Below the pieces are notes generated by a model, which had not been told where the DNA came from, made no database searches, and saw nothing but the letters and a program-made list of their open reading frames with translations. DNA of 63,275 nt, counting the filler, from Octopus bimaculoides (Eukaryota): assembly GCF_001194135.2 (NCBI RefSeq). It is 8 parts of 8 records of this genome, joined end to end, with 100 filler letters (N's around TTAATTAATTAA, not from the genome) between each part and the next. Parts side by side here need not be neighbours in the genome. Positions count along the whole stretch, not along the records: positions 37,512 to 48,035 come from NC_069002.1; 7 more parts are not named here. The stretch is one strand, 5' to 3'. This document shows positions 37,512 through 48,035 of this stretch, piece by piece (the stretch's first letter is position 1; the number at the start of each line of letters is the position of its first letter). The translations under genes and the position numbers were made by a program.

Positions 37512-40500
37512 ATACGTACGAACGTACGTTCCTACGTACGTTCGTTCATTCGTTTCTTCGTTCATTCGTACATACGTACGTATGTACGTACGTTCGTTCG
37601 TTAGTTCATTCGTTCGTACATACGTACTTACATACGTACGTTCGTTTGTTCGTACGTACGTTCGTTTGTTCGTACATACGTACTTATGTACGTACATTAG
37701 TTCGTAAGTACGTATGATCCTAAGTACGTACGTACGTGCGTAAGTTCGTTGTTTCTTTCGTTCGTACGTATGAAAGTACGTACGAAAGTACGTTCGGTCG
37801 TAAGTTCGTTCGTACATACGTACGTACGTACGTATATACGTTCGTTCGTTTGAACGTACGTACGTTCTTTCGTGCATTCGCACGTACGTACGTACGTACG
37901 TTCGTTTGTTCATACGTACGAACGTACGTTCCTACGTACGTTCGTTCGTTCGTTCTTTCGTTCGTTCGTTCTTTCGTTTGTTCGTTCATTCGTACATAGG
38001 TATGTATGTACGTACGTTCGTTCGTAACAACGTACGTTCGTACGATCGTAAATACGTAATAACGTAGGTACGTTCTTTCGTTCGTACGTACGTACATACG
38101 TTCCTTCGTTCGTTCGATCGTTCGTTTGTTCTTACGTACGTACGTACGTACTTATAAACGTTCGTTTCCTCGTTCGTTCGTTCGTTCTTTCATTCGTACC
38201 TACGTACATACTTACGTTCGTAAGTTCCTTCATTTGTTCTTTCTTTTGTTTCTTCGATCGTTCGTTCATTGGTTCGTTCGTACGTACGTACTTTCGTTCA
38301 TACTTTCTTACCAACGATCGTTCGATCTTTCGTACGTACGTACTTACAAACTTACATCCGTACGTACGCTTGTTCGCTCGTTCTTTCGTGCCTACTTCCT
38401 GTCGTACGTTCATTTGTTCGTTCGATCGTTCATGAGTATTTACGTAGGTAAGTTCGTTCATTGTTCGTTCGGTCAGTTTATTTGTACCTACGTACGTTCG
38501 TTCTTCGTTCGTTCGATCTTTCGTTAGTTCATTCTTTAGTTTGTTCGTTCGCTCATTCGTTCATACGTACGTTCGTATGTACGTTCGTTAGCTCGTTCGT
38601 ACGTACGTACTTAGGTACCAATTTACATAGTACGTACGTACGTACGTTCGTTCGTTCGTTCGTTCGGTCGTTCGTACGTACGTATGTACGTACGTTCGTT
38701 CTTTCGTTCGTACTTACGTACGTACGTTCGATCGTTCGTTCGTACTTAGGTTCGTACGTACGTTCGTTTGTTCGTTCATTTTTTTCGTTCCTTTTCTCTT
38801 TCGTACGAGCATATGTTCGTATGTTCGTTCGATCGTTCGTTCGTTCTTTCGTTTGTATGTACTTACGTACGAACATAGGTACGTTCCTTCGTTCGTAAGT
38901 TCGTTCGTTCGTTCGTTCATTCGTAAGTACGTAGGTTCCTAAGTACGTACGTCCGTTCGTCGTTTCGTTCGTTCGTTCTTACGTACGTACGTTCGTTTCC
39001 TCGCTCGTTCGTTCGTTCTTTCATTCGTACCTACGTACATACTTACGTTCGTTCGTTCCTTCATTCGTGCTTTCTTTTGTTTCTTCGATCGTTCGTTCGT
39101 TCGTTCTTTCGTACGTACGTACGTACATCCGTACGTTACGTTTGTTCGCTCGTTCTTTCGTGCCTACTTCCTTTCGTACGTTCGTTTGTTCGTTCGTTCG
39201 TTCGATCGTTCATGAGTATTTACGTACGTAAGTTCGTTCATTCGGTCGTTTTTTTCGTACCTACGTACGTTCTTCGTTCGTTCGATCTTTCATTCGTTCG
39301 ATAGTTCGTACGTTCATTTGTACGTACGTACGTACGTTCGTTCATTGGTTCAATCGGTCGTTCGTACGTACGTTAGTTCGTCCGATCGTTCGTTAGTTTT
39401 TTCGTTGGTTCAATCGTTCGTTCGTTCTTTCTTTTGTTCTTTCATTCATTCGTTCTTTCTTTCGTTCGATCGTTCTTTCGTTCGTTCGTACGTACTTACG
39501 TACATACATACATACGTACGTACGTTCGTTCGTTCGATCGGTCTTACATACGTACGTATGTACGTACGTTCGTTCGTTTATTCGTATGTACGTACGTTCA
39601 TAAGTACTTACGGACGTCCATTCGTTCGTTCGTTCATTCGTGCGTACGTACGTACGTACGTTCGTTCTTTCATTCGTACGTACGAAAGTACGTTCGGTCG
39701 TTCGTTCGTTCGTTCGATCGTTCGTTCATACGTACGAACGTACGTTCCTACGTACGTTCGTTCATTCGTTCATTCGTACATACGTACGTATGTACGTACG
39801 TTCGTTCGTTAGTTCATTCGTTCGTACGTACGTACTTACATACGTACGTACAAACGTACGTTCGTTTGTTCGTACATACGTACTTATGTACGTACATTCG
39901 TAAGTACGTATGATCCTAAGTACGTACGTACGTGCGTAAGTTCGTTGTTTCTTTCGTTCGTACGTATGAAAGTACGTACGAAAGTACGTTCGGTCGTTCG
40001 TACAGACGTATGTACGTACGTTCGTTCGTAACAACGTACGTTCGTACGATCGTAAATACATAACGTAGGTACGTTCTTTCGTTCGTTCGTTCGTACGTAC
40101 GTACATACGTTCCTTCGTTCGTTCGATCGTTCGTTCGATCGTTCGTTCGTTCTTACGTACGTAGGTACGTACTTATAAACGTTCGTTTCCTCGTTCGTTC
40201 TTTCATTCGTACCTACGTACATACTTACGTTCGTAAGTTCCTTCATTTGTTCTTTCTTTTGTTTCTTCGATCGTTCGTTCATTGGTTCGTTCGTACGTAC
40301 GTACGTACTTCCGTTCGTTCTTTCTTACCAACGATCGTTCGATCTTTCGTACGTACGTACTTACGAACTTACATCCGTACGTACGTTTGTTCGCTCGTTC
40401 TTTCGTGCCTACTTCCTTTCGTACGTTCATTTGTTCGTTCGATCGTTCATGAGTATTTACGTACGTAAGTTCGTTCATTGTTCGTCCGGTCAGTTTATTT

Positions 40501-43500
40501 GTACCTACGTACGTTCGTTCTTCGTTCGTTCGATCTTTCGTTAGTTCATTCTTTAGTTTGTTCGTTCGATCATTCGTTCGTACGTACGTTCGTATGTACG
40601 TTCGTTAGCTCGTTCGTACGTACGTACTTAGGTACCAATTTACATAGTACGTACGTACGTACATTCGTTCGTTCGCTCGTTCGTTCTTACGCACTTATCT
40701 ACATAAATACGTTCATTCGTTCGCTAGTTCATTCATTCGTTCGTTCGTATGTGCGTACGTACGTAAGATCGTTCGTTCTTACGTACGTACGTACGTACGT
40801 TCGTTCGTCCTTTCGTTCGTTCCTTCGATCGTTCGTTCGTACGTACGTATGTACGTACGTTCGTTCTTTCGTTCGTACTTACGTACGTACGTTCGATCGT
40901 TCTTTCGTCCATTGTGTATTCGTACGTACGTTCGTTTGTTCGTTAGTTTGTTCGTACGTACGAGAGTACGTTAGCTCGTTCGTCCTTTCGTAAGTACGTA
41001 CGTAAGTATGTTTGTTCTTTTGTCCTTTCGTTCGATAGTACTTTCGTTGGTTCATTTTTTAGTGAGTTCGTTCGTTCGCTCGCTCGTTCGTTCATACGCA
41101 CTTATCTACGTACGTACGTTCGTATGTGCGTACGTACATAAGATCCTTCGTTCGTACGTACATACTTACTTACGTTCATCCTTTCGTACGTTCGTACATA
41201 CGTACGTACATACATTCTTTCGTTCGTTGTTTCGTTCGTACGTTTGTTCGTTCATACTTTCGTACGTACGTTCGTTTGTTCGTTTGATCATTCGTTCGTG
41301 CATACGTTCATTCGTTCTTTCATTCCTTCGTCCGTACGTACTTTCGTAATACGTACGTACATACGTTCGTTTGTACGAAAGTACGTACGTTCGTTCTTTC
41401 TTTCAATCGTTTGTTCGTTCGTTCGTACATACGTTCATTCCTTCGTTCGTTCATTCGTCCTTTCTTTCGTTCGATCGTTCCTTCGTACGTCGTTACGTAC
41501 GTATATACATACGTACGTACGTACACACATACGTACGTACGTACATAGGTACGTACGTACGTACGTATGTATGTACGTACGTACGTTCGTTCGGTCGGTC
41601 TCACATACGTACGTTCGTTTTTAAGTTCGTTCGTTCATTCGTAAGTACGGTCGTTCATAAGTACTTACGGACGGACGTTCGTTCTTTCGTTCGTTCGTGC
41701 GTACGTACGTTCGTTCTTTCGTTCGTTCGTTCATTTTATATTCGTACGTACTTACGTACGTTTATTCGTTCGTTCATTTTTTCGCTCGTTCGTACGTTCG
41801 AACATACGTACGTACATACATTCGTTCGTTCGTTGTTTCGTTCGTACGTTCGTTCGTACATTCGTATGTACGTTCGTTTGTTCGTTCGTTCATTCGTTCT
41901 TTCATTCCTTCGTCCGTTTGTTCGTACGTACGTACATTCTTTCGTAATACGTACGTACATACGTCCGTACATACGTTCGTTCGTAAGAAAGTTTGTTCGT
42001 TCGTTCGTACGTACGTACGTTTGTTCGTTCGTTCGTACGTACGTACGTTTGTTCGTACGTACGTACGTACGTTCGTTCTTTCAATCGTTCGTTGTTTTGT
42101 TCTTTCATTCATTCGTTCTTTATTTAGTACGTACGTACATACATTCGTACGTTCGTTCGATCGTTCATTCGAAAGTACGTACGTACGTTCGTGCTTTCAT
42201 TCGTACGTACAAAAGTACGTTCGGTCGTTCGTACGTACGTACGTACGTACGTACGTTCGTTCTTTTGTTCGTTCATTCGTTCGTACATGTTCGTTCGTAC
42301 GTTCGATTGTTCGTTCGTTTATTGTGTATTCGTACGTACGTACGTACGTTTGTTCGCTAGTTCGTTCGTACGTACGTACATTCATTCGTTCGTTCTTTAA
42401 TTTGTTCAATCTTTCGTTCTTTCGTTCGTATGTATTTACGTACGAACATAGGTACGTTCCTTCGTACATACGTACGTATGTACGCACGTTCGTTCGTAAG
42501 TTTATTCGTTCATTCGTAAGTACGTATGTTCGTAAGTACGTACGTACGTACGTTCGTTGGTTCTTTCGTTCGTTCGTTAGATCGTTCGTTCATTCGTACG
42601 TACGTTCGTTCATTAGTACGTACGTTCGTTGGTACGTAAGTACGTTTGTTCATTCGTCCGTTCTTTAGTTAGTTCGTTCCTTTCTTCCTTCGTACGTATT
42701 ATGTACGTTCGTTTGTTCATTCGTACGTACGTACGTACTTAGGTACCAATTTACGTACATACGTACGTACATTCGTTCGTTCATACGCACGTATTTACGT
42801 ACGTACGTTCGTTCGGTAGTTCATTCGTTCGTTCTGTCGTATGTACGTACGTACGTAAGATCGTTCGTTCGTGCGTACATACTTACTTACGCTCGTCCTT
42901 TCGTTCGTTCCTACGTTCGTTCGTTCGTTGTTTCGTTCGTTCGTACATTCGTTCGTGCATATGTTCATTCGTTCCTTCGTCCGTTCGTTCGTAATACGTG
43001 TGTACATACGTCCGTACATACGTTCGTTCGTACGAAAGAACGTACGTTTGTTCGTTCGTACGTACGTTCGTTCTTTCATTCGTTCGTTCTTTCGTTCGTA
43101 CGTTCATTCATTCATTCGTTCTTTCGTTCGATCGTTCCGTCTTACATACGTACGTGTGTACGTACGTTCGTTCTTAAGTTCGTTCATTCATTCGTAAGTA
43201 CGTACGTTCATAAGCACTTACGGACGGACGTTCGTTCGTTCATTCGTACGTACGTTCGTTCTTTCATTCGTACGTACGAACGATCGAACGAACGAAAGCT
43301 TCTACATACGTCCGTACGTACGGACGAACGAATGAATGAGCGAATGAACGAACGTACGAAAGATAGTACGTACTTACAAACGAACGCACGAAGGAACGAA
43401 GTGACTGAACGAGCGAACGTACGAACGGATGAATGTACGAACAAACGAATGGACATACCTATGTTATTACGAACGAACGTACATACGTCTGTACGAACGA

Positions 43501-46500
43501 TCGAAAGAAAGAACGAACGTACGTACATATGTATGAATGAAAGAACCAAACAACGAACAAACGAACGTACGTATGTTCATACGTACGAATGAACGAACGT
43601 ACGTACGTATGTACGAACGATCGAAGGAACGAACGAAAGAACTAAAGTACGTACGTGCGAACGAACGATCGTACGTACGTACGAACGAACGTATGTACGT
43701 AGATAAGTGCGTACGAGCCTACGAACGATCGAAAGAACCAAACAACGAACAAACTAACGTACGTTTGTACGTACGTTCATACGTACGAACGAACGTACGT
43801 ACGTATGTACGAACGAACGAACGATCGAACTAAAGTACGTAAGTACGTACGTGCGAACGAACGATCGTACGTACGTACGTACGTACATACGAACGAACGC
43901 ATGTACGTAGATAAGTGCGTACGATCGAACGAACGAATGTACGTACGTAAATACGTACCTATGTACATACGTACGATTGAACAAACGAACTAACAAAAGA
44001 ATGGACCAACGAAAGAATTAACGAACGAACGTAGGTACGAAAGAACGAACGAACTTACGTACGTAAATACGTATGAACGAGCGAACGAGGAAACGAACGA
44101 ACGAGGAAACGAACGTACCTATGTACGTACGTGCTTACGAATGATCGAACGACCGAAGGAACAAACGAACATATGTACGTACGGACGGACGAACAAACGA
44201 ACGAAAGCATCTACATACGTCCGTACGTACGAATGAACGTACGTACGTATGTACGAACGAAATAACGAATGAACGTACGTACATATGTATGTACGAAAGA
44301 TCGAACGAAAGAACGAACGTACGTACGAATGAAAGAACCCACGAACGAACAAAAGAGCGAATGAACGAAAGAACAAACGTACTTACGAACGAACGCATGT
44401 ATGAACGAACGAAATAACGAACGAACGAACGAACGAACTATGGAACGTACGATCGTACGTATGAACAAACGAAAGTACTTTCGGACGTACAAACGAACTA
44501 ACGTATATACGTACGTATGTATGTAACAACGAATGAACGAACGATCGAACGTACTTTCGTACGTACGAACGAAAGAAAAAACGAAATTACGTACTACGTA
44601 CTTACGAACATACGTATGTACGAACGAACGAAAGTAGGTATGTACGTACGTACGTACGCAAGTACGTACTAACGAACGAACGAAGGCACGATCGTATGTT
44701 CGTACGAACGAATGAACGAACTAAAGAACGAATGAATGAACGTACGAACGAACGATTGAACGAACGTACGTACGAACAAACAAACGTACGTAATTACGTA
44801 CAAACGAACGAACGAACGAACGTATGTACGTACGTATGTACGTACCTATTACGAAAGAACGAACGAATGCACGAATGAATGATCGCACGAACAAACGTAC
44901 GTACGTACGAACGAACGAACGACGAACGAACGAACGAACGAACGACGAACGAATGTACGTACGAAGGAGCGAACGAAAGATCGAAAGAACCAAACAACGA
45001 ACAAACGAACGTACGTTTGTACGACGTTCATACGTACGAATGAAGGAATGAACGAACGAACGAAAGTAAATACGTACGAACGAAAGAACGAACGTACGTA
45101 TGATCGAAAGAACGAACAAACGAACGTACGTTTGTACGTACGTTCATACGTACGAATGAAGGAATAAACGAAAGTATGTACGAACGTACGAACGAACGAC
45201 CGAACGTACGTACATACGAACGAACGTATGTACGTAGATAAGTACGTACGATCGAATGTACGTACGTAAATACGTACCTAAGTACGTACGTACGAAAAAA
45301 CGAACGAACTTACGTACGCAAATACGTATGAACGATCGAACGAACGAGGAAACGAACGTACCTAAGTACGTACGTGCGTACGAAAGAACAAACGAACATA
45401 TGTATGTACGTACGAACGTACGGACGAACAAACGAACGAAAGATAGTACGTACGTACAAACGAACGAACGAACGAAATGAAGGAACGAGTGAACGTATGA
45501 ACGGATGAATGTACGTATGTACGAACGTGCGTACAAACGAATGAACTTACGTATGTACGTACGAATGAAAGAACCCACGAACGGACAAAAGAGCGAACGA
45601 ACGAAAGAACAAACGTACTTACGAACGAACGAACGTACGTACATACGTACGCATGCACGAATGAACGAACGAACGAACGTACGTTCGTACGTATGAACGA
45701 ACGAACCAACCAACAAAAGAACGTACTTACGAATGCACGAAAGAACGAACGTACGTACAAACGTATATACGTACGTATGTATGTACCAACGAATGAACGA
45801 ACGAACGACCGAAGGTACTTTCTTACGTACGAACAAAATAACGAACGAAAGAAAAAACGAAATTACGTACGTACGTACTTACGAACATACGTACTTACGA
45901 ACGAACGAACGAACGAACTTATGAACGTACATACTTACGTATGTACGAACGAACGAACGAACGTACGAACGTATGTTCGTACGAACGAATGAACGAACAA
46001 AACAACGAATGAATGAACGTACGCACGTACGTACGAACGATTGAACGAACGAACAAACGTACGTAATTACGTACAAACGAACGAACGTATGTACGTACGC
46101 ATGTACGTACCTATTACGAAAGAACATACGTACGAAGGAATGAACGTACGCACGAACGAATGATGGCACGAACAAACATACGTACGTACGAAGGAAGGAA
46201 CGAACGAACGACAAAAATAACGAAGGAACGACGAACATACGTACATATGTATGTACGTACACACGTACGTACTAAGGAACGAACGAACGAACGTACAAGT
46301 GAAACAACGAATGAACGAACGAACGTACGTACGTACGTACGGACGAACAACCGGACGATCGAAGGAACGAACGAAAGAACTAAAGTACGTACGTACGTAC
46401 GTACGTACGTAGGTAAGTGCGTACGAACGAACGAACGTACGTACGTACGTAGATAAGTGCGTACGAACGAACGAACGAACGAACGAACGAATGTACTACG

Positions 46501-48035
46501 TAACTACGTACCTAATTACGTACGTACGAATGAACAAACGAATGTACATACGTACGAACGAACGAACTAACAAAAGAATGAACCAACGAAAGGACTAACG
46601 AACGAACGTAGGTACGAAAAAACGAACGAAAGAACGAATGAACTTACGTACGTAAATACGTATGAACGATCGAACGAACGAACGAGGAAACGAACGTCCC
46701 TAAGTACGTACGTGCGTACGGAAGAACGAACGATCGAACGAACGAACGAATATATGTACGTACGTACGTACAGACGAACAAATGCATCTACATACGTCCG
46801 TACGTACGAACGAACGAGCGAATGAACGTACGTACGTATGTACGAACGAAAGACAGTACGTACGTACAAACGAAGGAACTAAAATGAAGGAACGAGCGAA
46901 CGTACGAACGGATGAATGTACTTATGTACGTACGAACGAACGCAAGAACGAACGTAGGAACGTACGTTCTTCACGAACGAAATAACGAATCAACCTACGT
47001 ACATACGTCTGTACGAACGAAAGATCGGACGTACGTACGTATGTACGAATGAAAGAACCCACGAACGAACGAACGAAAGAACAAACGTACTTACGTCCGT
47101 ACTAATGAACGAACGAACGTACGTACATACGTACGCATGCACGAACGAACGAACGTACGTTCGTACGTATGAACGAACGAATGAACTAACAAACGAAGGT
47201 ACGTAAGTACGTACGAATGCAGGAAAGAACGAACGAACGTACGTACGTACGTACAAATGAACGAACGTATATACGTACGTACGTATGTACCAATGAACGA
47301 ACGACCGAACATACTTTCGTACGTACGAACGAAAGAACAAACGAAATTACGTACGTACGTACATACGAACATACGTACTTACGAACGAACGAACGAAAGT
47401 AGCTATGTACGTACGTAAATACATACGAACGAACGATCGAACGAACGCACGAACTTATGTTCGTACGAACGAAAGAAAGTGAACGAATGAACGAACAAAA
47501 GAACGAACGAATGAACGTACGTGCGTACGTACGAATGAACAAACGAACGAATGTACGTACGTACGAACAAACGTACGTAATTAAGTACAAACGAACGAAC
47601 GAACGTACGTTTGTACGTACGCATATACGTACATACGTATTACGAAAGAACGAACGTACGAAACAATGAACGTACGCACGAACGAATGATCACACGAACA
47701 AACGTACGTACGTACGAAGGAACGAACGAACAAACGAAAAATATAACGAAGGAACGACGAACGTACGTACATATGTATGTACGTACACACGTACGTACGA
47801 ACGAACGAACGAACGTAAGTACGTACATGCGAAGGAGCGAAAGAACCAAACAACGAACAAACGAACGTACGTACGTTCATACGTACGAATGAAGGAATGA
47901 ACGAACGAAAGAAAGTAAGTACGTACGAACGAACAAACGTACGATCGTTCGGACGTTCGTTCGTACGTTCGTACATACGTTCGTTCATTCCTTCATTCGT
48001 ACGTATGAACGTACGTACAAACGTACGTTCGTTTA
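37512..48035. repeat. 10.5-kb CpG-rich compound tetranucleotide satellite (TACG/TTCG/CGAA and single-base variants) with higher-order repeats and an internal inversion
   Basis: Mostly preserved 4-nt register. TTCG polarity from 37512 to about 43270, CGAA polarity from about 43277 to 47940, then a short reversal. No N inside; bounded on both sides by artificial spacers. Confidence 0.95.

What the first reader, a model, noticed from the sequence alone, without database searches (positions are those of the whole stretch)
37512..48035. 10.5-kb CpG-saturated satellite built from the self-complementary tetramer TACG and the polar tetramer TTCG
Seen: almost every 4-mer is TACG, TTCG/CGAA or a one-base variant, giving a CpG density far above the AT-rich flanks. 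Established: (TACG)n is its own reverse complement and alternates purine and pyrimidine, so it can form hairpins or cruciforms and is Z-DNA prone. Seen: short TACG seeds sit at junctions of ordinary (TATG)/(TACA) microsatellites elsewhere in the window (about 14238, 37167, 58724). Inference: the array may have been born from such a junction and then amplified, and could be a methylation sink or a structural (centromere- or heterochromatin-like) domain. I do not recognise it as a named satellite.
Basis: partly seen in the sequence, partly recalled or inferred. Interest (0 to 1): 0.75.

Follow-up and report, generated by a model that had tools for sequence, protein, structure and literature searches.

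The report
Degenerate CpG-rich TACG/TTCG tetranucleotide satellite
This 10.5-kb piece is a real-looking but ordinary kind of non-coding satellite DNA, an old and decayed array of the 4-base units TACG and TTCG that was enlarged by copying kilobase chunks and flipped in orientation once; its only unusual trait is its high CpG content.

Summary
All 10,524 bases are one period-4 array. 55% of 2,606 in-register units are TACG, TTCG or AACG (=CGAA), and 37% more are one base off. CpG observed/expected is 3.4.

- Perfect runs are short (at most 6 TACG or 9 TTCG units). The array is a mosaic of 3-4-unit blocks, not a long (TACG)n.
- Polarity flips at a (TACG)2 pivot (43271-43278) and again at 47940-47947. 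The arms share specific variants in inverted orientation but are not mirror images.
- The array grew by irregular kb-scale duplications (86-93% identity). There is no regular higher-order repeat.

Paralogue indels are mostly multiples of 4, and frameshifts are inherited between copies. This argues for real DNA rather than a base-calling artefact.

Differences at CpG sites are about half transitions and half transversions, so there is no footprint of heavy germline methylation.

There are no genes or RNAs; ORFs up to 329 aa are mechanical.

The piece has no flanks.

I found no named counterpart. Small compound TACG/CGAA microsatellites (50-400 bp) occur in metagenomes.

Verdict: a new member of a known kind, a microsatellite-derived satellite. 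Interest is low to moderate.

The parts
37512..43270 (+). Left arm: units T[T/A]CG (TTCG 30%, TACG 25%, the rest mostly one-base variants such as TTCA, TTCT, TACA, TTTG). T-rich on the + strand, AT skew about -0.45.
43271..43278 (.). Pivot 1: the self-complementary pair TACG TACG, where polarity changes from TTCG-type to AACG (=CGAA)-type. The tetramer register is continuous across it (phase segment 42995-43399).
43279..47939 (-). Right arm: the same satellite in inverted orientation. Units are [A/T]ACG (AACG 29%, TACG 25%) and AT skew is about +0.45. It shares 337 distinct 20-mers with the left arm in inverted orientation against 9 in the same orientation.
47940..47947 (.). Pivot 2: TACG ATCG (contains the 8-bp palindrome ACGATCGT), where polarity switches back.
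47948..48035 (+). Terminal 88 bp back in TTCG polarity, running to the piece's edge. 47946-48034 is an inverted copy of 45118-45206 (96.6% identity).
47852..48033 (.). Terminal fold-back: 88-nt arms 47852-47939 and 47946-48033 are 83% complementary with a 6-nt spacer. They include a perfect 41-bp stem, 47867-47907 with 47978-48018. The single-stranded DNA fold of 47840-48035 is -77.8 kcal/mol, z = -13.
37512..38666 (+). Copy A of the best-preserved internal duplication. 37512-37801 matches 39728-39997 at 91.7%, and 38004-38666 matches 40008-40683 at 92.9%.
   Evidence: (497-unit lag)
39728..40683 (+). Copy B of that duplication, 2.0-2.2 kb downstream. It carries the same frameshift sites as copy A: 38459/40476, 38475/40492, 38503/40520 and 38629/40643.
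44485..47815 (-). Zone of right-arm paralogous segments, with irregular lags of about 1.25-1.5 kb and 2.6-2.8 kb. Examples: 44565-44860 with 45841-46125 (85.5%); 46112-46289 with 47638-47815 (92.1%); 44485-44632 with 47249-47393 (89.9%).
41494..41586 (.). Longest alternating purine/pyrimidine tracts, 54 bp and 38 bp, made of TACG with TACA, TATA and CACA variants. These are the most Z-DNA-prone spot.

Best explanation
This is a genuine, non-coding, microsatellite-derived satellite array from a eukaryotic genome. I could not verify the organism.

The building blocks are two tetranucleotides that differ at one base, TACG and TTCG. They sit in short alternating blocks of about 3.5 and 4.3 units, a loose 36-56-bp wavelength.

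I infer this history:
1. Replication slippage built and reshaped the short blocks, adding and losing whole 4-bp units.
2. Point mutation, mostly G/C to A/T, degraded about 45% of the units.
3. Unequal exchange or segmental duplication copied chunks ranging from under 100 bp to about 1.2 kb, at lags of about 1.2-2.8 kb. This carried particular variants and rare frameshifts along and enlarged the array to at least 10.5 kb.
4. At least one inversion, pivoting on self-complementary TACG units, placed part of the array in the opposite orientation.

Shown directly: the anatomy, the register conservation, the inherited variants, the inverted sharing of variants between the arms, and the absence of genes and RNAs.

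Inferred: the order and mechanism of events, and that the array has no sequence-specific function beyond being repetitive, probably heterochromatic, DNA.

The high CpG content survives because the CpG sites show no strong methylation-type decay.
For: - Period-4 array over the whole piece.
- 92% of in-register units are canonical or one base off.
- Only 36 phase shifts occur in 10.5 kb. Many are shared by paralogous copies, so they were inherited rather than being random errors.
- In 15 paralogous pairs, 16 of 21 indels are multiples of 4 bp, the signature of slippage or unit exchange.
- Internal duplications are 86-93% identical, with lags of about 1.2-2.8 kb. There is a 497-unit autocorrelation peak.
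- Block alternation: unit-level autocorrelation is negative at lags of 4-7 units and positive at 9-14 units. TRF finds weak 32, 36 and 52-bp consensus periods.
- The arms share 337 distinct 20-mers inverted against 9 direct. The landmark variants GCACTTATCTAC and TTTCCTCG are inverted between arms.
- Inverted high-stringency matches have scattered centres, so the arms are not a mirror-image palindrome.
- Non-coding: no Rfam family, no tRNA and no Pfam domain above threshold.
- The long ORFs follow from the units: written out, (TACG)n, (TTCG)n and (CGAA)n have no stop codon in any frame.
- Small compound TACG/CGAA/TACA/TATG microsatellites occur in unrelated metagenome contigs, which shows the seed type exists.
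Against: - The piece has no unique flanks, and I could examine no reads. Independent confirmation that the sequence exists in a genome is therefore missing.
- The fold-back lies exactly at the piece's 3' edge, where assembly artefacts tend to occur.
- No close relative turned up in 241 million metagenome records, in GTDB genomes or in 5.8 billion predicted proteins. Those collections are poor in animal satellite DNA.
- Function was not tested at all. A structural role is not excluded.
Confidence: 0.8

Rival explanations
1. The array is a functional structural domain: a centromeric or heterochromatin-organising satellite, or a sink for DNA methylation or methyl-CpG-binding proteins. Its CpG density and hairpin or Z-DNA potential would then matter.
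For: - CpG every 6.5 bp.
- Single strands fold better than shuffles, z = -5 to -13.
- 134 alternating purine/pyrimidine tracts of 12 bp or more.
- There are strand-polarity switches. From general knowledge, such switches are common inside centromeric satellite arrays in complete assemblies.
Against: - No chromatin, methylation, copy-number or location data could be obtained.
- The array is old and degenerate, with no regular higher-order repeat and 69% unit-to-unit matches. Actively homogenised centromere cores usually look different.
- Differences at CpG sites are not dominated by transitions (38 ts to 31 tv). At the unit level, TG/CA variants make up 17-19% of units and other changes 20-22%. 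This does not fit long-term heavy germline methylation.
- Perfect palindromes are at most 26 bp.
Confidence: 0.12
2. It is a sequencing or assembly artefact: junk low-complexity base-calls, a chimeric fold-back read, or a mis-joined contig of unrelated microsatellite reads.
For: - The piece is made only of repeat, with no unique flank.
- Both polarity switches lie on self-complementary units, where an assembler could join reads of opposite strand.
- A hairpin-like fold-back sits at the very 3' edge.
- From memory, the ONT ligation adapter contains TTCG-, TTCA- and TACG-like words. I did not test this.
Against: - A 690-bp segment is repeated 2 kb away at 92.9% identity, with the same odd variants and the same frameshift sites.
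- Paralogue indels are mostly multiples of 4 bp rather than the 1-bp errors of noisy reads.
- The register holds for up to 1,195 bp.
- The arms are not mirror images, as a fold-back read would give.
- The terminal 89 bp matches a distant paralogue (96.6%) better than the adjacent arm (83%).
- One paper on nanopore error profiles, read in part, describes repeat-length errors and does not mention invented TACG/TTCG arrays.
Confidence: 0.07
3. It is protein-coding: the 100-329-aa ORFs would encode a repetitive (YVRT/FVRS)n protein.
For: 26 ORFs of 100 aa or more lie on both strands. Similar low-complexity 'proteins' are present in public databases.
Against: - The ORFs overlap on both strands and in several frames.
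- They arise because the three tetramers contain no stop codon in any frame.
- No Pfam domain reaches threshold.
- Database hits are at most 52% identical and are themselves read-throughs of (TTCA)n, (TTCG)n and (TACA)n microsatellites.
- No exact gene call is on record.
Confidence: 0.01

Closest known systems
Compound or imperfect tetranucleotide microsatellites, catalogued generically as simple repeats (TACG)n and (TTCG)n/(CGAA)n
   Same: Same units, the same head-to-tail period-4 structure and the same gain or loss of whole units. Metagenome contigs L007, L011, L020 and L035 carry 50-400-bp compound (TACG)n(CGAA)n, (TATG)n(TACG)n and (TACG TTCG)n arrays.
   Different: This array is 25-100 times longer, at least 10.5 kb. 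It is strongly degenerate, with 45% variant units. It was enlarged by kb-scale duplication and contains inversions. None of the 33 metagenome hits exceeds about 270 bp of array at the detection threshold I used.
Bkm satellite of snakes, interspersed (GATA)n/(GACA)n (recalled from memory, not tested)
   Same: A long satellite built from two tetranucleotides that differ by one base and sit in short interspersed blocks.
   Different: The motifs differ and Bkm has no CpG. Bkm is defined by GATA/GACA and by sex-chromosome enrichment, and neither applies or can be tested here.
Higher-order-repeat centromeric satellites, such as primate alpha satellite or Arabidopsis CEN180 (general knowledge)
   Same: A kilobase-scale tandem array, strand-polarity switches inside the array, and local duplications.
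   Different: The monomer is 4 bp, not about 170 bp. There is no regular higher-order period. Copies are only 86-93% alike at irregular lags. Centromere location is untested.
CpG-containing simple satellites, such as human satellite II/III derived from (ATTCC)n (general knowledge)
   Same: A degenerate array derived from a short simple unit, with CpG-bearing variants and kilobase-to-megabase blocks.
   Different: The unit length and sequence differ. CpG density here is far higher, with 61% of the 4-bp units carrying one.

Membership tests
Simple tandem repeat (microsatellite-type, unit 1-6 bp) | Head-to-tail copies of a 1-6-bp unit | tested here: met
   TRF finds period 4 and 2,631 copies. Match frequency at lag 4 is 0.70, against 0.12-0.20 at lags 1-3.
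Simple tandem repeat (microsatellite-type, unit 1-6 bp) | Short locus (tens to hundreds of bp) of largely perfect copies | tested here: not met
   The array is 10,524 bp. The longest perfect runs are 6 TACG and 9 TTCG units, and 45% of units are variants.
Satellite DNA | Long (kb or more) tandem array of non-coding repeats | tested here: met
   The whole 10.5-kb piece is array and runs to both edges. No genes or RNAs are present.
Satellite DNA | High genomic copy number, with blocks at heterochromatic or centromeric sites | not testable with these tools
Higher-order-repeat (HOR) satellite | A regular multi-unit period, with HOR copies much more alike than neighbouring units | tested here: not met
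   Only weak 32, 36 and 52-bp consensus periods, at 62-63% matches. Unit autocorrelation is at most 0.09 at 9-14 units. Kb-scale paralogues lie at irregular lags of 1.2-2.8 kb with 86-93% identity.
Large palindrome / inverted duplication | Two arms that are mirror-image reverse complements about one centre, at high identity | tested here: not met
   High-stringency inverted matches are 102 bp or shorter and their centres scatter between about 42,400 and 44,200. Arm complementarity next to the switch is at background level, about 71%.
Bkm-type compound tetranucleotide satellite | Two tetranucleotides one base apart, interspersed in short blocks | tested here: met
   TACG-like blocks average 3.4-3.6 units and TTCG-like blocks 4.3 units.
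Bkm-type compound tetranucleotide satellite | GATA/GACA motifs | tested here: not met
   The units are TACG, TTCG and AACG. This is a resemblance in architecture only.
CpG island | CpG observed/expected above 0.6 together with G+C of at least 50% | tested here: not met
   CpG o/e is 3.38, but G+C is 42.6%, and the sequence is a tandem repeat rather than a unique promoter-type region.
Z-DNA- or cruciform-prone tract | Alternating purine/pyrimidine tracts, or perfect inverted repeats, long enough to flip or extrude | tested here: inconclusive
   134 alternating tracts of 12 bp or more, 37 of 20 bp or more, maximum 54 bp. Perfect palindromes are at most 26 bp. Formation in vivo is not testable here.
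Sequencing or base-calling artefact | Random single-base indels, with no variants inherited between copies | tested here: not met
   Frameshift sites are shared by paralogues. 16 of 21 paralogue indels are multiples of 4. One 690-bp paralogue pair is 92.9% identical.
Sequencing or base-calling artefact | Absence of the sequence from independent reads | not testable with these tools

The most novel reading that the evidence does not exclude
The array is one block of an abundant, lineage-specific, CpG-dense satellite that marks centromeric or pericentromeric chromatin in its host, possibly a cephalopod. It would be held in an unusual epigenetic state: either protected from methylation despite one CpG per 6.5 bp, or serving as a dedicated methyl-CpG platform. 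The strand switches would reflect centromere-type inversion dynamics.
Probability: 0.1. Interest if true: 0.55.

Novelty: new member of a known kind. Interest (0 to 1): 0.25.

Why it matters
CpG-bearing simple repeats are usually the rarest class, because methylated CpG decays. PMC3397955 makes this argument for CG dinucleotide repeats.

A repeat of at least 10.5 kb that keeps a CpG in 61% of its 4-bp units shows little methylation-type decay. It is therefore a convenient natural probe of how its host genome methylates, or fails to methylate, repetitive DNA.

It is also a practical warning:
- Such arrays produce stop-free ORFs of up to 329 aa on both strands.
- Equivalent microsatellite read-throughs already sit in protein databases. 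One carries a transporter name (P0003).

Beyond that, it is an ordinary product of slippage, duplication and inversion.

Tried and rejected
- **Reads.** No reads could be laid, and I did not try to get around this.
- **Identifying the source through ORFs.**
  - The protein search gave only read-throughs of other tetranucleotide microsatellites, at most 52% identical.
  - No exact gene call exists for the 329-aa ORF.
  - The closest mixed-composition hit, P0005, lies on an anonymous 2.5-kb ENA metagenome contig.
- **Pattern scans.** A 20-mer that occurs 10 times in the array hit 33 metagenome contigs and one bacterial MAG. All carry only short arrays.
- **Literature.** Seven searches found no described TACG/TTCG satellite. 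They gave only general context.
- **Mirror-palindrome or fold-back explanation of the two arms.** Rejected.
- **Regular higher-order repeat.** Rejected.
- **Coding or RNA-gene content.** Rejected.
- **Base-caller hallucination resembling an ONT adapter.** I recalled this idea from memory only. I found no literature support, and the inherited variants speak against it.
Full report
**What is in the window.** Only 37512-48035 is sequence. The rest is N and a linker. The piece is repeat from its first base to its last. There are no flanks, and the true size and location of the array are unknown.

**Checking the observation.**
- The piece is 42.6% G+C and has 1,611 CpG. CpG observed/expected is 3.38, while GpC, CpC and GpG are about 0.2.
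- TRF reports one period-4 array, 37513-48032, with 2,631 copies and consensus TACG.
- I tracked the tetramer register with a four-state Viterbi parse. 10,424 of 10,524 bases fall into 2,606 in-frame units, in only 37 phase segments (median 254 bp, longest 1,195 bp).
- 55.0% of units are exactly TACG, TTCG or AACG (the rotation of CGAA), and 37.1% differ at one base. Base composition predicts 1.1% and 10.9%.
- The twelve rotations of the three units make up 54.5% of all overlapping 4-mers. Dinucleotide-preserving shuffles give 30.8% ± 0.4%.
'Saturated' is too strong, since 61% of units keep their CpG.

**Fine structure.**
- Perfect runs are short, at most 6 TACG units and 9 TTCG units.
- I classed units by the variable base. 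TACG-like blocks average 3.4-3.6 units and TTCG-like blocks 4.3 units.
- Unit-level autocorrelation is positive at lags 1-2, negative at lags 4-7 and weakly positive at lags 9-14. This loose 36-56-bp wavelength matches TRF's weak 32, 36 and 52-bp consensus periods at 62-63% matches.
- There is no regular higher-order repeat.

**Polarity.**
- AT skew is about -0.45 up to about 43,280 and about +0.45 after it.
- In register, the sequence reads ...TTCT TTCA TTCG | TACG TACG | AACG ATCG AACG AACG AAAG... The pivot is the self-complementary pair at 43271-43278, and the register does not break.
- A second switch occurs at TACG ATCG (47940-47947). The last 88 bp are TTCG-type again.
- The two arms share 337 distinct 20-mers in inverted orientation and 9 in the same orientation. 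Distinctive variants such as GCACTTATCTAC and TTTCCTCG occur on opposite strands in the two arms.
- The arms are therefore the same satellite family, inverted. They did not arise independently.
- They are not mirror images. High-stringency inverted matches are 102 bp or shorter and their centres are scattered. Complementarity next to the pivot is at the background 71%.

**Growth by duplication.**
- Stringent self-comparison finds paralogous segments:

| Segment 1 | Segment 2 | Identity |
|---|---|---|
| 38004-38666 | 40008-40683 | 92.9% |
| 37512-37801 | 39728-39997 | 91.7% |
| 46112-46289 | 47638-47815 | 92.1% |
| 44565-44860 | 45841-46125 | 85.5% |

- Other pairs exist, with lags of about 1.2-2.8 kb.
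- The left-arm duplication shows as a 497-unit autocorrelation peak.
- I aligned 15 such pairs, 2,789 sites in all. 16 of 21 indels are multiples of 4 bp.
- Of the 36 frameshift sites in the array, many recur at equivalent positions in paralogues. Examples: 38459/40476; 38503/39272/40520; 41348/41946/42994; 44848/46114/47639.
- Errors do not reproduce themselves 2 kb away. These features point to real templates copied by real duplication, and to slippage or unequal exchange in whole units.

**Mutational footprint at CpG.**
- Between paralogues, CpG sites are 7.5% diverged and other sites 4.6%. The CpG differences are 38 transitions and 31 transversions.
- At the unit level, TG or CA replaces CG in 17-19% of units, and other changes at those two positions account for 20-22%.
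- Nearly all common changes are G/C to A/T, transitions and transversions alike.
- From general knowledge, heavy germline 5mC makes CpG transitions outnumber everything else several-fold and pulls CpG below expectation. Neither is seen here.
- I infer, with moderate confidence and small numbers, that the array has not been heavily methylated in the germline over the time these differences accumulated.
- Amplification of pre-existing variants inflates the unit-level counts, so they are descriptive only.

**Structure-forming potential.**

| Region | Position | Fold, kcal/mol | Shuffle mean | z |
|---|---|---|---|---|
| Within the left arm | 41990-42289 | -62.2 | -44.9 | -5.0 |
| Pivot 1 region | 43133-43432 | -81.1 | -57.5 | -6.5 |
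| 3' end | 47840-48035 | -77.8 | -37.8 | -13 |

- All three single-stranded DNA folds are more stable than their dinucleotide shuffles.
- Perfect palindromes reach only 26 bp. The longest alternating purine/pyrimidine tract is 54 bp (41494-41547). Tracts of 20 bp or more cover 9.3% of the array.

**The 3' fold-back.**
- Arms 47852-47939 and 47946-48033 are 83% complementary with a 6-nt spacer. They contain a perfect 41-bp stem.
- This lies at the edge of the piece, where assembly fold-backs occur.
- However, the terminal 89 bp match the inverse of a distant paralogue (45118-45206, 96.6%) better than they match the adjacent arm.
- I read it as the start of another inverted block. Only reads can settle this.

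**Not a gene.**
- 26 ORFs of 100-329 aa lie on both strands. They follow mechanically from the units. Written out, (TACG)n, (TTCG)n and (CGAA)n have no stop codon in any frame.
- No Pfam family reaches its cut-off. There are no Rfam families and no tRNAs.
- The protein search returned 304 low-complexity hits, at most 52% identical among the 120 listed. The seven I read are read-throughs of (TTCA)n, (TTCG)n or (TACA)n microsatellites fused to unrelated sequence. Of the 120, only two mix TACG- and TTCG-derived words.

**Relatives elsewhere.**
- The 20-mer GAACGAACGTACGTACGTAC occurs 10 times in the array. It is found in 33 of 241 million metagenome records and in one GTDB genome contig.
- At the detection threshold I used, none of these carries more than about 270 bp of such repeat.
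- Reading them shows small compound loci:
  - L020: (TATG)n(TACG)n(AACG)2(TACG)n(TATG)n
  - L007: [(CATA)n(CGAA)2(CGTA)3]n
  - L011: (TACG)6(TTCG)9
  - L035: (TACG TTCG)n
- These are small-scale versions of what is amplified here. That specific origin is not shown for this array.

**Literature.**
- Seven full-text searches found no described satellite of these units.
- Context only:
  - A 154-species survey found high microsatellite coverage in its three cephalopods, and explains the rarity of CG dinucleotide repeats by methylation decay (PMC3397955).
  - Tetranucleotides are 21% of microsatellites in the cuttlefish Sepiella japonica (PMC12564688).
- I could not verify that this piece comes from a cephalopod.

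**Verdict.**
- The finding is real as an observation and is most likely real DNA.
- It is a degenerate, CpG-rich, compound tetranucleotide satellite. It has one internal inversion, a second polarity switch at its edge, and irregular kb-scale duplications.
- It belongs to a well-known kind, microsatellite-derived satellite DNA, with an uncommon motif. I found no name for it.
- Any structural or epigenetic role is untested. The only indirect evidence, the substitution pattern, speaks against heavy germline methylation.
- Interest is low to moderate.

Noticed in passing
window 47852-48033: A near-hairpin sits at the very 3' edge of the piece: 88-nt arms, a perfect 41-bp stem (47867-47907 with 47978-48018), DNA fold z = -13. 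It is either the start of another inverted satellite block or a fold-back artefact at a contig end.
   Followed up: partly
window 37512-48035 (36 phase-shift sites, e.g. 38459, 38503, 41348, 44848, 46230): Frameshifts of the tetramer register are biased. 24 of 36 shift the register by 3 mod 4, which could be a 1-bp loss or a 3-bp gain. 9 shift by 1 and 3 shift by 2. Many are inherited between paralogous copies, so independent events are fewer. I have not explained the bias.
   Followed up: partly
P0003: A 324-aa database protein consists largely of (TTCA/TTCG)n read-through (FVRSFIHS...). One source names it 'ABC-type multidrug transport system fused ATPase/permease subunit', which looks like a spurious annotation on a microsatellite ORF.
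   Followed up: no
L007 1660-2047; L020 1623-1740; L011 11329-11738; L035 1180-1500: Metagenome contigs carry small compound microsatellites that mix TACG with CGAA/TTCG, TACA and TATG blocks. One (L007) is a roughly 40-bp compound unit repeated about 10 times. Their source organisms are unknown.
   Followed up: partly
window 40691, 41098 (+) and 43699, 43907, 46449 (-): The landmark variant GCACTTATCTAC recurs 5 times, always in the orientation of its arm. A second landmark, GTACCAATTTAC (38615, 40632, 42743), occurs only in the left arm. GAACCAAACAACGAACAAAC (43543, 43735, 44987, 47843) and CTACATACGTCCGTACG occur only in the right arm. So each arm also amplified its own private variants after the inversion.
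   Followed up: partly
window 43575, 43775, 45026, 45142, 47875 (+); 45684, 47160, 47996 (-): The motif GTTCATACGTACGAA, a short opposite-polarity TTCA unit followed by TACG and CGAA, is embedded repeatedly inside the right arm and also occurs in the left arm (37908, 39724). It forms small local inverted repeats within otherwise uniform polarity.
   Followed up: no
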